A stretch of DNA of 63,792 nt, filler included, from Octopus bimaculoides (taxonomy: Eukaryota): assembly GCF_001194135.2 (NCBI RefSeq). It is 6 parts of 6 records of this genome, joined end to end, with 100 filler letters (N's around TTAATTAATTAA, not from the genome) between each part and the next. Parts side by side here need not be neighbours in the genome. Positions count along the whole stretch, not along the records: positions 22,106 to 29,165 come from NC_068982.1; 5 more parts are not named here. The stretch is one strand, 5' to 3'. Position 1 is the stretch's first letter; each line of letters starts with the position of its first letter. A model generated the notes under the pieces. That model saw only the letters and a program-made list of their open reading frames with translations. It did no database searches and was not told the DNA's origin. Positions 25,277 through 26,999 of the stretch are shown in pieces. The translations under genes and the position numbers were made by a program.

Positions 25277-26464
25277 ATGTCTATACATACTTATTTTGCG
25301 TCTACAAAAATGAAGTATACATACATAAATACATACACACGTATATTTGTGTGTGTGCGTATTTGTATGAGAATGAATATATAGGTATATAAACCAAAAC
25401 AATAAACAATACAGTGGTCTGAAATATCAAGCGATCCCATCTTGATTCAATATCAGACGAGAGTTATCCTCCAGAAAATGAATAACTGATAAATTAACTG
25501 ATAGTAAGTTTTAATAGAAGTCGTATATATAAAAAGAAAAACAAATTATTATACCAACAGAACTGACAATTTTATTTAAAAAAAGAACAAAAGATCCTCT
25601 CATAGAACCCAGCATACCTAACGTCAGTCGTTAATGTTTGACATATATTACTTCGTCTAATGTTAATGTATTCCATTCGCTTTGAAAAGCAACGTGTCTG
25701 TTTTCTTTACCCTCTCAGATGAACTCATGTATAAAGTGAACACGATTAGACATTTCTCTTAAATCCGTATGAATTCGAACACATGGTGTGCTCCTACTGA
25801 TTAATCATTATAGGGGAGACAATCTCTTCTAAATTAAGTTAAGCTCACACAAATTTGAAAATTTATAATTTTTTAATCAAAGAATAAAGGTGTACAAAGC
25901 ATATACATTTAATGTTTTCCTTTGTTTTTGTCTACACGTTACATAGTTCTTAAAATTTCTAGTAGTTGGTGGCCGTGTATAACGTTATTTCATCCTCCTT
26001 TGGAATTGTCAGCACAGCATGACTTGAGACAGATGAATTAAGCTTTTACAAATTTAGACATATCTTAGAGAGAGAAGATAGTTTATATATATATTTGTAT
26101 ATAAAAATTGAGAAAAAAACATGGAAACATGTTGAGAAGTCGGTAAGGTACGGAGTTTGATTACCTTCGAAAATTTGTTAGTCCTATTCTATTTCATTTG
26201 CTGCTCATGGAAGATGGGGAAAAGGGCTATGTGCTTTGCATCCCCCTACAGAATCATAGGCGAATTATTGGTAATATCAAATGTAATTAACATGAAAGAG
26301 AACACAATTAGATGAAACTACATCTCTATATTATTCACGATAATACTTCAATTTCACTTGAATTAATTTTAACATTATTCCATAGGACAATAAAGAACCT
26401 TAAAAAGTTCAAATAATGTCGAAATTAAAAGCAAACATGAAATTAAGACATACATACATACATA

Positions 26465-26815
26465 CTGCCTAAATACTAATCTTGAGAAATTAGGTTTCTC
26501 AAAACCAGAAAGAGAAAGCTGATTCGAAGACTATAGATCCAAGCCTTCACTGGAACTGTAAAAATTTGTAAAACTTTCCAGAAGTTTATCATTTTAGTAT
26601 ATATGAGCATGTCAAGACATGCAACCAGATGCAAGAGAATACATACATGAAACTAAACATACAAATCTGCACACATACATACATACGTACATTACATACA
26701 AAACTACCCTATCGTTAAAATTCCAATGAATCTAGGTTAGAAATTCTTTTGATCTAGGTTAGAAACCGACTCTCCATCTATTGGATAGAATTCTAGAAAC
26801 AACGCTGAATAATGA
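26465..26815 (+). mobile_element. R4/Dong-like LINE, 5'-truncated 3' end flanked by (CATA)n on both sides
   Basis: Highly similar to the reverse complement of 11513-11875 and encodes the same decayed C-terminus ending KICKTFQKFII. Confidence 0.75.
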
Positions 26816-26999
26816 CATACATACATGCCCATTTAACCAGCTCCAATGAAACTGAGAAAGTAACCTTTTTTTGATATATAGCAGTCAATATATTTCCAGT
26901 TAGGTAAACTGAGGTTGACGCTGCAAACAATCGATACATCAAAGTTTAATGTAAATACATCTATTATTACTTACAAGTTGCTGAAGGTTTGTCGTTTGT

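What the first reader, a model, noticed from the sequence alone, without database searches (positions are those of the whole stretch)
26447..26826. Candidate (CATA)n-targeting R4/Dong-like retrotransposon
Seen: this 5'-truncated copy has GA(CATA)4 immediately 5' of the truncation point and GA(CATA)2CAT at the 3' end. The copy at 11.5 kb also ends in (CATA)n, and the apparent true 5' end at 49631 begins directly after (CATA)n on the same strand. All four visible junctions therefore lie in the same tetranucleotide repeat in the same orientation. An element-encoded tail would not explain the repeat at the 5' junctions. Established: R4-clade elements use a restriction-like endonuclease, and Dong elements target (TAA)n microsatellites. 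Inference: a sequence-specific LINE targeting (TACA/CATA)n. I do not know of a description of this target in cephalopods.
Basis: partly seen in the sequence, partly recalled or inferred. Interest (0 to 1): 0.75.

Follow-up and report, generated by a model that had tools for sequence, protein, structure and literature searches.

The report
Short insert between two (CATA)n repeats
A 350-base non-coding stretch of octopus-type DNA lies between two short (CATA)n repeats exactly as described, but with the data I could reach nothing shows that it is a copy of a mobile element, let alone an R4/Dong-type element that aims at (CATA)n.

Summary

The core claim could not be tested. That claim is a 5'-truncated copy of a repeat family whose homology-defined junctions all lie in (CATA)n.
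- The read-mapping route was closed.
- The public DNA collections hold no octopus DNA.
- The protein route gave only one 20-kb Octopus vulgaris locus.

In the 27 kb of octopus DNA I had:
- The stretch has no relative.
- The piece has no reverse transcriptase or endonuclease on either strand.
- (CATA)n runs of at least 10 bases occur 0.73 times per kb, so two same-strand runs 350 bases apart are not remarkable in themselves.

One local hint favours a real insertion. Both runs are preceded by GA and followed by TGCC, like one duplicated target site. This is weak (about 5% of run pairs share four bases downstream), and it fits staggered nicks better than a precise R2/R4-type cut.

Microsatellite-aimed LINEs are already known: Dong on (TAA)n and Waldo on (ACAY)n. 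Dong-R4 elements are already reported as abundant in octopus.

Verdict: cannot tell; modest interest.

The parts
26447..26465 (+). Upstream array GA(CATA)4C, perfect, 4.5 units.
   Evidence: Direct reading; TRF 26448-26465, period 4, 100% matches; exact-run search.
26466..26638 (+). Unique non-coding segment 1 (173 nt). It begins with TGCC (26466-26469) and contains the hairpin GAGAAATTAGGTTTCTC.
   Evidence: Stops in all six frames; no Pfam domain; no homologue of its 58-aa minus-strand ORF among 5.8 billion protein clusters; no significant DNA match in the piece or L001.
26639..26700 (+). Internal degenerate (CATA)n block, same orientation as the two flanking arrays.
   Evidence: Exact runs at 26639-26648, 26673-26686 and 26693-26700; TRF 26673-26700, period 4, 84% matches.
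26701..26813 (+). Unique non-coding segment 2 (113 nt) with a 22-nt tandem duplication (26714-26765). It ends in ...AACGCTGAATAAT.
   Evidence: TRF period 22, 2.4 copies. RNA fold is not better than shuffles (z -1.0). No homology to segment 1 or to sequences upstream of the other arrays. A weak match to a Helitron coding stretch in L001 (p about 0.02) is taken as chance.
26814..26826 (+). Downstream array GA(CATA)2CAT, perfect.
   Evidence: Direct reading; exact run 26815-26826.
26826..26829 (+). TGCC directly after the downstream array, matching TGCC at 26466-26469 after the upstream array. It may be the end of a duplicated target GA(CATA)nC[A]TGCC.
   Evidence: Junction alignment. Empirical background: 4.7% of 190 array pairs share at least 4 contiguous downstream bases, so the evidence is weak.

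Best explanation
The 26466-26813 stretch is most likely a short retroposed insert, probably the 5'-truncated, non-coding 3' end of a non-LTR retrotransposon. It entered a small (CATA)n microsatellite by target-primed reverse transcription with staggered nicks.

Proposed steps, all inferred and none shown:
1. The bottom strand of a locus reading ...AAATTAAGA(CATA)nC TGCC CATTTAACC... was nicked in or at the left edge of the array.
2. [quoted passage not shown] That end is either a (CAUA)n tail or simply ...AAUAAU.
3. Reverse transcription stopped after about 350 nt.
4. The top strand was nicked a few bases beyond the array.
5. Repair duplicated the array plus TGCC on both sides.

On this reading the repeat at the 5' junction is a target-site duplication. 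It does not show that a sequence-specific restriction-like endonuclease was at work. The class of the parent element (R4/Dong, CR1/L2, RTE or other) is undetermined.
For: - Both arrays are perfect, in the same orientation, preceded by GA and followed by TGCC, as expected if they are the two copies of one duplicated target.
- The DNA between them is complex, not decayed repeat. In the same 27-kb sample the other neighbouring (CATA)n runs sit in compound simple-repeat tracts, so this is the only case where more than 100 nt of complex DNA separates same-strand runs.
[quoted passage not shown] RTE partial elements seed microsatellite families. The octopus RTE has a microsatellite 3' UTR.
- From my own knowledge: stringent-type LINEs such as UnaL2 need a short tandem-repeat tail that pairs with the target.
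- The piece is packed with retroposons: SINE copies at 22618-22800, 27340-27997 and 28444-28656.
Against: - No second copy of the stretch was found in the piece or in L001, so its repeat nature is unproven.
- The TGCC match is weak: 4.7% of array pairs do as well. The GA match is about 1 in 16.
- The run density of 0.73 per kb means the arrangement can arise with no insertion at all.
- There is no coding remnant, poly(A) or clear stem-loop.
- A duplication of 19-25 nt is long for most LINEs.
Confidence: 0.35

Rival explanations
1. This is a 5'-truncated copy of an R4/Dong-clade LINE whose restriction-like endonuclease, guided by an N-terminal DNA-binding domain, cuts (CATA)n specifically. Every copy, truncated or not, is then flanked by the repeat on both sides.
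For: - Arrays on both sides in the same orientation.
- R4/Dong elements carry RT plus a REL-endonuclease and insert in rDNA or microsatellites. Dong uses (TAA)n in insects, molluscs and cnidarians.
- RLE clades are mostly target specific.
- Dong-R4 is among the most recently active LINE groups in O. vulgaris: 5 families and 1129 near-full-length young insertions. R4-clade RTs are found in O. sinensis.
- (CATA)n is a very abundant potential target in this genome.
Against: - No RT, endonuclease or Myb-like coding sequence anywhere in the piece. The clade assignment rests on analogy alone.
- Only one copy is visible, so specificity cannot be measured.
- With a precise cut inside the array, GA before both arrays and TGCC after both would be two coincidences.
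- The tail argument used to exclude other mechanisms is not valid.
Confidence: 0.2
2. There is no mobile element. This is ordinary AT-rich intergenic DNA in which three (CATA)n microsatellite remnants lie close together by chance or by local microsatellite birth and decay. The 'copy' is only the DNA between them.
For: - Run density is 0.73 per kb in 27 kb of octopus DNA, and runs cluster.
- All five runs in the piece share one orientation, including 25317-25327, which is 1.1 kb away.
- No homologue of the stretch was found.
- No domain and no significant RNA structure.
- The shared flanking bases are only weakly significant.
Against: - The intervening 173 and 113 nt are complex sequence, unlike the compound simple-repeat tracts around the other run clusters.
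- GA and TGCC flank both perfect arrays.
- 27 kb is far too little sequence to exclude a repeat family of a few thousand copies.
Confidence: 0.3
3. A non-retrotransposon rearrangement. Examples are unequal exchange or replication slippage between two (CATA)n arrays, or filler DNA captured during repair of a break in a fragile microsatellite. Any of these would leave the array on both sides of foreign DNA.
For: - Duplicated GA(CATA)n...TGCC on both sides.
- No terminal features of any transposon class: no poly(A), inverted repeats or coding sequence.
Against: - No donor sequence for the 350 nt in the piece or L001.
- No similarity of the stretch to the 400 nt before it, and only marginal similarity to the 400 nt after it (p about 0.01, low-complexity-like alignment).
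Confidence: 0.15

Closest known systems
Dong (R4 clade, restriction-like endonuclease LINE; Bombyx, Anopheles, Biomphalaria, ostracods, cnidarians)
   Same: An element flanked on both sides by one microsatellite in one orientation. A mollusc member is known (DongBg). The Dong-R4 group is abundant in octopus.
   Different: Dong's documented target is (TAA)n, not (CATA)n. No RT, endonuclease or Myb-like sequence is present here to place the fragment in the clade.
Waldo (WaldoAg1, WaldoAg2, WaldoFs1; R1 clade, APE-type endonuclease)
   Same: Aims at (ACAY)n microsatellites, which include (ACAT)n, the same repeat as (CATA)n. A LINE aimed at this repeat is therefore already described.
   Different: Waldo is an insect element with an apurinic/apyrimidinic-type endonuclease. 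Nothing links the octopus fragment to the R1 clade.
RTE-type partial elements with simple-repeat 3' ends (lepidopteran BmRTE families; the octopus RTE of Petrosino et al.)
   Same: 5'-truncated 3' fragments that end in a microsatellite, are flanked by target-site duplications and scatter ready-made microsatellites through the genome.
   Different: In those elements the repeat starts right after the ORF. Here at least 113 nt, and probably 348 nt, of non-coding sequence precede the terminal array. RTE duplications are 6-12 bp, shorter than the 19-25 nt suggested here.
Togen (NeSL-related, (TG)n-specific) and microsatellite-specific HERO families
   Same: Restriction-like-endonuclease LINEs that aim at microsatellites other than (TAA)n.
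   Different: Different clades and different repeats. No coding evidence here.

Membership tests
R4/Dong clade non-LTR retrotransposon | Reverse transcriptase whose sequence groups with R4, Dong and Rex6 | not testable with these tools
   No RT signal in any of six frames of the piece. The claimed copy is only about 350 nt of non-coding 3' end. No full-length copy could be fetched.
R4/Dong clade non-LTR retrotransposon | C-terminal restriction-like endonuclease (CCHC plus PD-(D/E)xK) and N-terminal Myb/SANT-like domain in a single ORF | not testable with these tools
   No coding sequence of any kind at or near 26447-26826.
R4/Dong clade non-LTR retrotransposon | Target specificity: independent copies, including 5'-truncated ones, flanked by the same target on both sides more often than background | tested here: inconclusive
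   One candidate copy has the repeat on both sides. No second copy was available. Background density of the repeat is very high, 0.73 runs per kb.
5'-truncated non-LTR retrotransposon copy (any clade) | Belongs to a dispersed multi-copy family with a shared 3' end | tested here: inconclusive
   No match in the 7-kb piece or the 20-kb O. vulgaris locus. Flanks of the other array clusters share nothing with it. The sample is too small to exclude a family.
5'-truncated non-LTR retrotransposon copy (any clade) | 3' tail (poly(A) or short tandem repeat) and flanking target-site duplication | tested here: inconclusive
   (CATA)2CAT stands at the 3' end. The candidate duplication GA(CATA)nC[A]TGCC is only weakly supported: 4.7% of array pairs share 4 downstream bases.
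Waldo-like (R1 clade) (ACAY)n-specific LINE | APE-type endonuclease and an R1-clade RT | not testable with these tools
   No coding sequence in the piece.

The most novel reading that the evidence does not exclude
An octopus lineage of R4/Dong elements has switched its microsatellite target from (TAA)n to (CATA)n. The great abundance of (CATA)n arrays in octopus genomes would then be both the landing pad for, and partly the product of, one of the most recently active LINE groups of the genus.
Probability: 0.2. Interest if true: 0.55.

Novelty: new member of a known kind. Interest (0 to 1): 0.3.

Why it matters
If octopus Dong-R4 elements do aim at (CATA)n, three things would follow.
- It would be a clean natural example of retargeting within a clade of restriction-like-endonuclease LINEs. 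That is of interest for understanding, and borrowing, programmable insertion by R2/R4-type elements.
- It would help explain how a LINE group can stay highly active in a large genome without hitting genes.
- It would link the unusual richness of (CATA)n arrays in octopus DNA to transposon activity.

As the evidence stands, this one locus shows only a non-coding stretch between two short repeats. Microsatellite-aimed LINEs, including one aimed at the same repeat class, are already known. The present value is therefore that of a lead, not of a finding.

Tried and rejected
**Routes to other copies**
2. Copies through proteins:
   - The 58-aa stop-to-stop ORF across the stretch has no word-sharing candidate in 5.8 billion clusters.
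   - Window ORFs 27801-28154, 26915-27079 and 26157-26315 are not on record.
3. Sampling the octopus genome through transposon proteins:
   - The Helitron fragment of the piece found only one Octopus protein, P0001, which gave L001, 20.3 kb.
   - A mariner-like ORF from L001 gave two useless hits.
   - P0060 and P0035 gave short Logan contigs; L002 has no match to the piece and L003 could not be compared.
4. DNA pattern scans:
   - The last 22 nt of the stretch in metagenome contigs gave 0 hits.
   - A pattern from the abundant octopus SINE gave one stray hit each in metagenome and prokaryote genome contigs. Those collections hold no octopus DNA.
5. Paper supplements:
   - The O. vulgaris transcriptome text (first 400 kb) holds none of eleven 13-17-mers from the stretch.
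   - Dong-R4-annotated transcripts and O. sinensis R4 RT sequences are named but their letters are not held.
   - No repeat library is in the 2026 O. vulgaris repeat paper.

**Ideas tested and dropped**
1. The DNA upstream of each (CATA)n array is the same 3' end, that is, head-to-tail copies. No significant similarity was found.
2. A 370-nt tandem unit. Not supported.
3. A Helitron origin for the last 60 nt. The match has p about 0.02 and was taken as chance.
4. A conserved RNA structure. z was -1.0 and -2.2, not convincing.
5. Known RNA families or tRNA. None found; the only matches were sub-threshold microRNA hits on simple repeats.

Full report
**What is in the sequence**

The piece is 7,060 bases, 22106-29165. 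Outside it the window holds only N and a 12-base linker.

- 26447-26465: GA(CATA)4C.
- 26814-26826: GA(CATA)2CAT.

Both are on the + strand in the same orientation. Tandem Repeats Finder and an exact-run search agree.

The 348 bases between the arrays are not uniform:
- 26466-26638: complex sequence.
- 26701-26813: complex sequence again, with a 22-base tandem duplication.

A further (CATA)n cluster lies at 25283-25337.

**Coding content and setting**

All six frames across 26400-26900 are full of stop codons. Pfam finds no domain in any of the six frames of the whole piece. There is therefore no reverse transcriptase or endonuclease remnant anywhere near.

The piece is typical octopus intergenic DNA:
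- A degenerate Helitron N-terminal fragment at 24004-24999. Its best protein relative is an Octopus vulgaris hypothetical protein (67% identity), and it is 85% identical in DNA to that locus.
- Copies of an abundant SINE at 22618-22800, 27340-27997 and 28444-28656.
- Long (TAGA)n and (GT)n arrays.
- No Rfam family or tRNA of note.

**Is the stretch a copy of a repeat family?**

This is the heart of the claim, and I could not test it properly.
- The run index for public reads was closed.
- The ORF across the stretch has no relative among 5.8 billion protein clusters.
- Flanking ORFs are not on record.
- My other two protein searches, meant to pull in octopus loci through transposon proteins, gave one 20.3-kb O. 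vulgaris locus, L001.
- Pattern scans of the metagenome and prokaryote collections show that they hold no octopus DNA. Even the abundant SINE gives one stray hit in each.
- Paper supplements name octopus Dong-R4 sequences but do not hold their letters.

Within the 27 kb I did have, neither half of the stretch has a significant match. The best hit is a 75-column alignment to a Helitron coding region at p about 0.02, which I take as chance. The DNA upstream of the four array clusters in the piece is not mutually related, so these are not head-to-tail copies of one 3' end. The flanks of the other array clusters share nothing with the candidate.

**Chance**

(CATA)n runs of at least 10 bases number 5 in the piece and 15 in L001, which is 0.73 per kb, and they cluster. 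Two same-strand runs 350 bases apart are therefore not surprising in themselves. The pattern would be significant only if the junctions were defined independently by homology to other copies.

One contrast does stand out. In L001 the neighbouring runs sit in compound simple-repeat tracts. Here more than 100 bases of complex DNA separate them.

**A local clue to mechanism**

Both arrays are preceded by GA and followed by TGCC...AAGA(CATA)4C-TGCC-TAAAT and ...AATGA(CATA)2CA-TGCC-CATTT. That is what one duplicated target site, GA(CATA)nC[A]TGCC, would look like. It would place the repeat at the 5' junction through an ordinary staggered-nick insertion rather than through a precise cut inside the array.

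The support is weak. Among 190 pairs of arrays in the sample, 4.7% share four or more contiguous downstream bases. The GA match is about 1 in 16.

**How it most likely works**

My best reading, at confidence 0.35, is a retroposed, 5'-truncated, non-coding 3' end of a LINE that entered a small (CATA)n array by target-primed reverse transcription. The RNA 3' end paired with the nicked array. The second nick fell just beyond the array, so array plus TGCC was duplicated. Every step is inferred.

Known parallels:
- RTE partial elements that carry and seed microsatellites and are flanked by duplications.
- The octopus RTE, whose 3' UTR is mostly microsatellite.
- From my own knowledge, stringent-type LINEs such as UnaL2, whose short tandem-repeat tail pairs with the target.

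**Rivals**

R4/Dong elements insert in rDNA or microsatellites; Dong uses (TAA)n, also in molluscs. Restriction-like-endonuclease clades are mostly target specific. Dong-R4 has 5 recently active families with 1129 young near-full-length insertions in O. vulgaris, and there are R4-clade RTs in O. sinensis. Nothing in this piece ties the fragment to that clade, and a precise cut would leave the shared GA and TGCC as coincidences.
- Chance clustering of microsatellites with no element at all (0.3) cannot be dismissed, given the run density.
- A repair or recombination event between arrays (0.15) is possible but has no donor sequence.

**Comparison with what is known, and novelty**

LINEs aimed at microsatellites are established:
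- Dong on (TAA)n.
- Waldo on (ACAY)n, which covers this very repeat.
- Mino on (AC)n, Kibi on (TC)n, Koshi on (TTC)n, Togen on (TG)n, and some HERO families.

A (CATA)n-aimed R4/Dong element in a cephalopod would be a new target within a known kind, not a new kind. I found no paper describing insertion preferences of octopus Dong-R4 elements.

**Verdict**

It is incomplete, because of the internal array. It is not beyond chance on its own. The interpretation can be neither supported nor refuted with the sequence I could reach. Interest is 0.3. The decisive test is simple with a genome assembly in hand: collect all copies, define their ends by homology, compare the junctions with background, and classify the full-length element.

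Noticed in passing
window 27307-27997 (and 28426-28656, 22618-22800 on the other strand): Three copies of the abundant octopus SINE stand head to tail with no spacer (period 224-226 nt), yet match each other at only about 73% (TRF). This is either an old tandem duplication or repeated insertion at the end of an earlier copy. Each unit is bounded by ...CTGTAATAAT.
   Followed up: partly
window 24004-24999: A degenerate Helitron N-terminal fragment with frameshifts and stops. It holds a 15-nt tandem repeat (24130-24182) and a 69-nt duplication (24220-24357). Its best relative is an O. vulgaris 'hypothetical predicted protein' (P0001, 67% aa). It is 85% identical in DNA to L001 9784-10392.
   Followed up: partly
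window 26985-27270: About 160 nt downstream of the candidate lies a stretch that looks by eye like a tRNA-derived SINE head (GGCCTGGTGGTTAGAGG...GGTTTCGATACTCC, resembling A and B boxes). Neither ARAGORN nor Rfam calls a tRNA there.
   Followed up: partly
window 22618-22961: One SINE copy (sense on the + strand) is followed, 33 nt after its end, by a 129-nt compound (TAGG)n/(TAGA)n array. This suggests that tetranucleotide arrays in this genome may often start as retroposon tails.
   Followed up: no
piece and L001 as a whole: (CATA)n runs of at least 10 nt occur 20 times in 27.4 kb (0.73 per kb). In L001 they mostly form compound tracts with (GTAC)n-like, (TA)n, (GT)n and (TACC)n repeats (e.g. 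L001 6016-6182 and 8731-9095). This density is unusually high and unexplained.
   Followed up: partly
window 23179-23233 and 23420-23474: A pair of related segments about 241 nt apart (86% over 28 nt) with a CGTAAATGGA duplication. This may be an unclassified short repeat.
   Followed up: no
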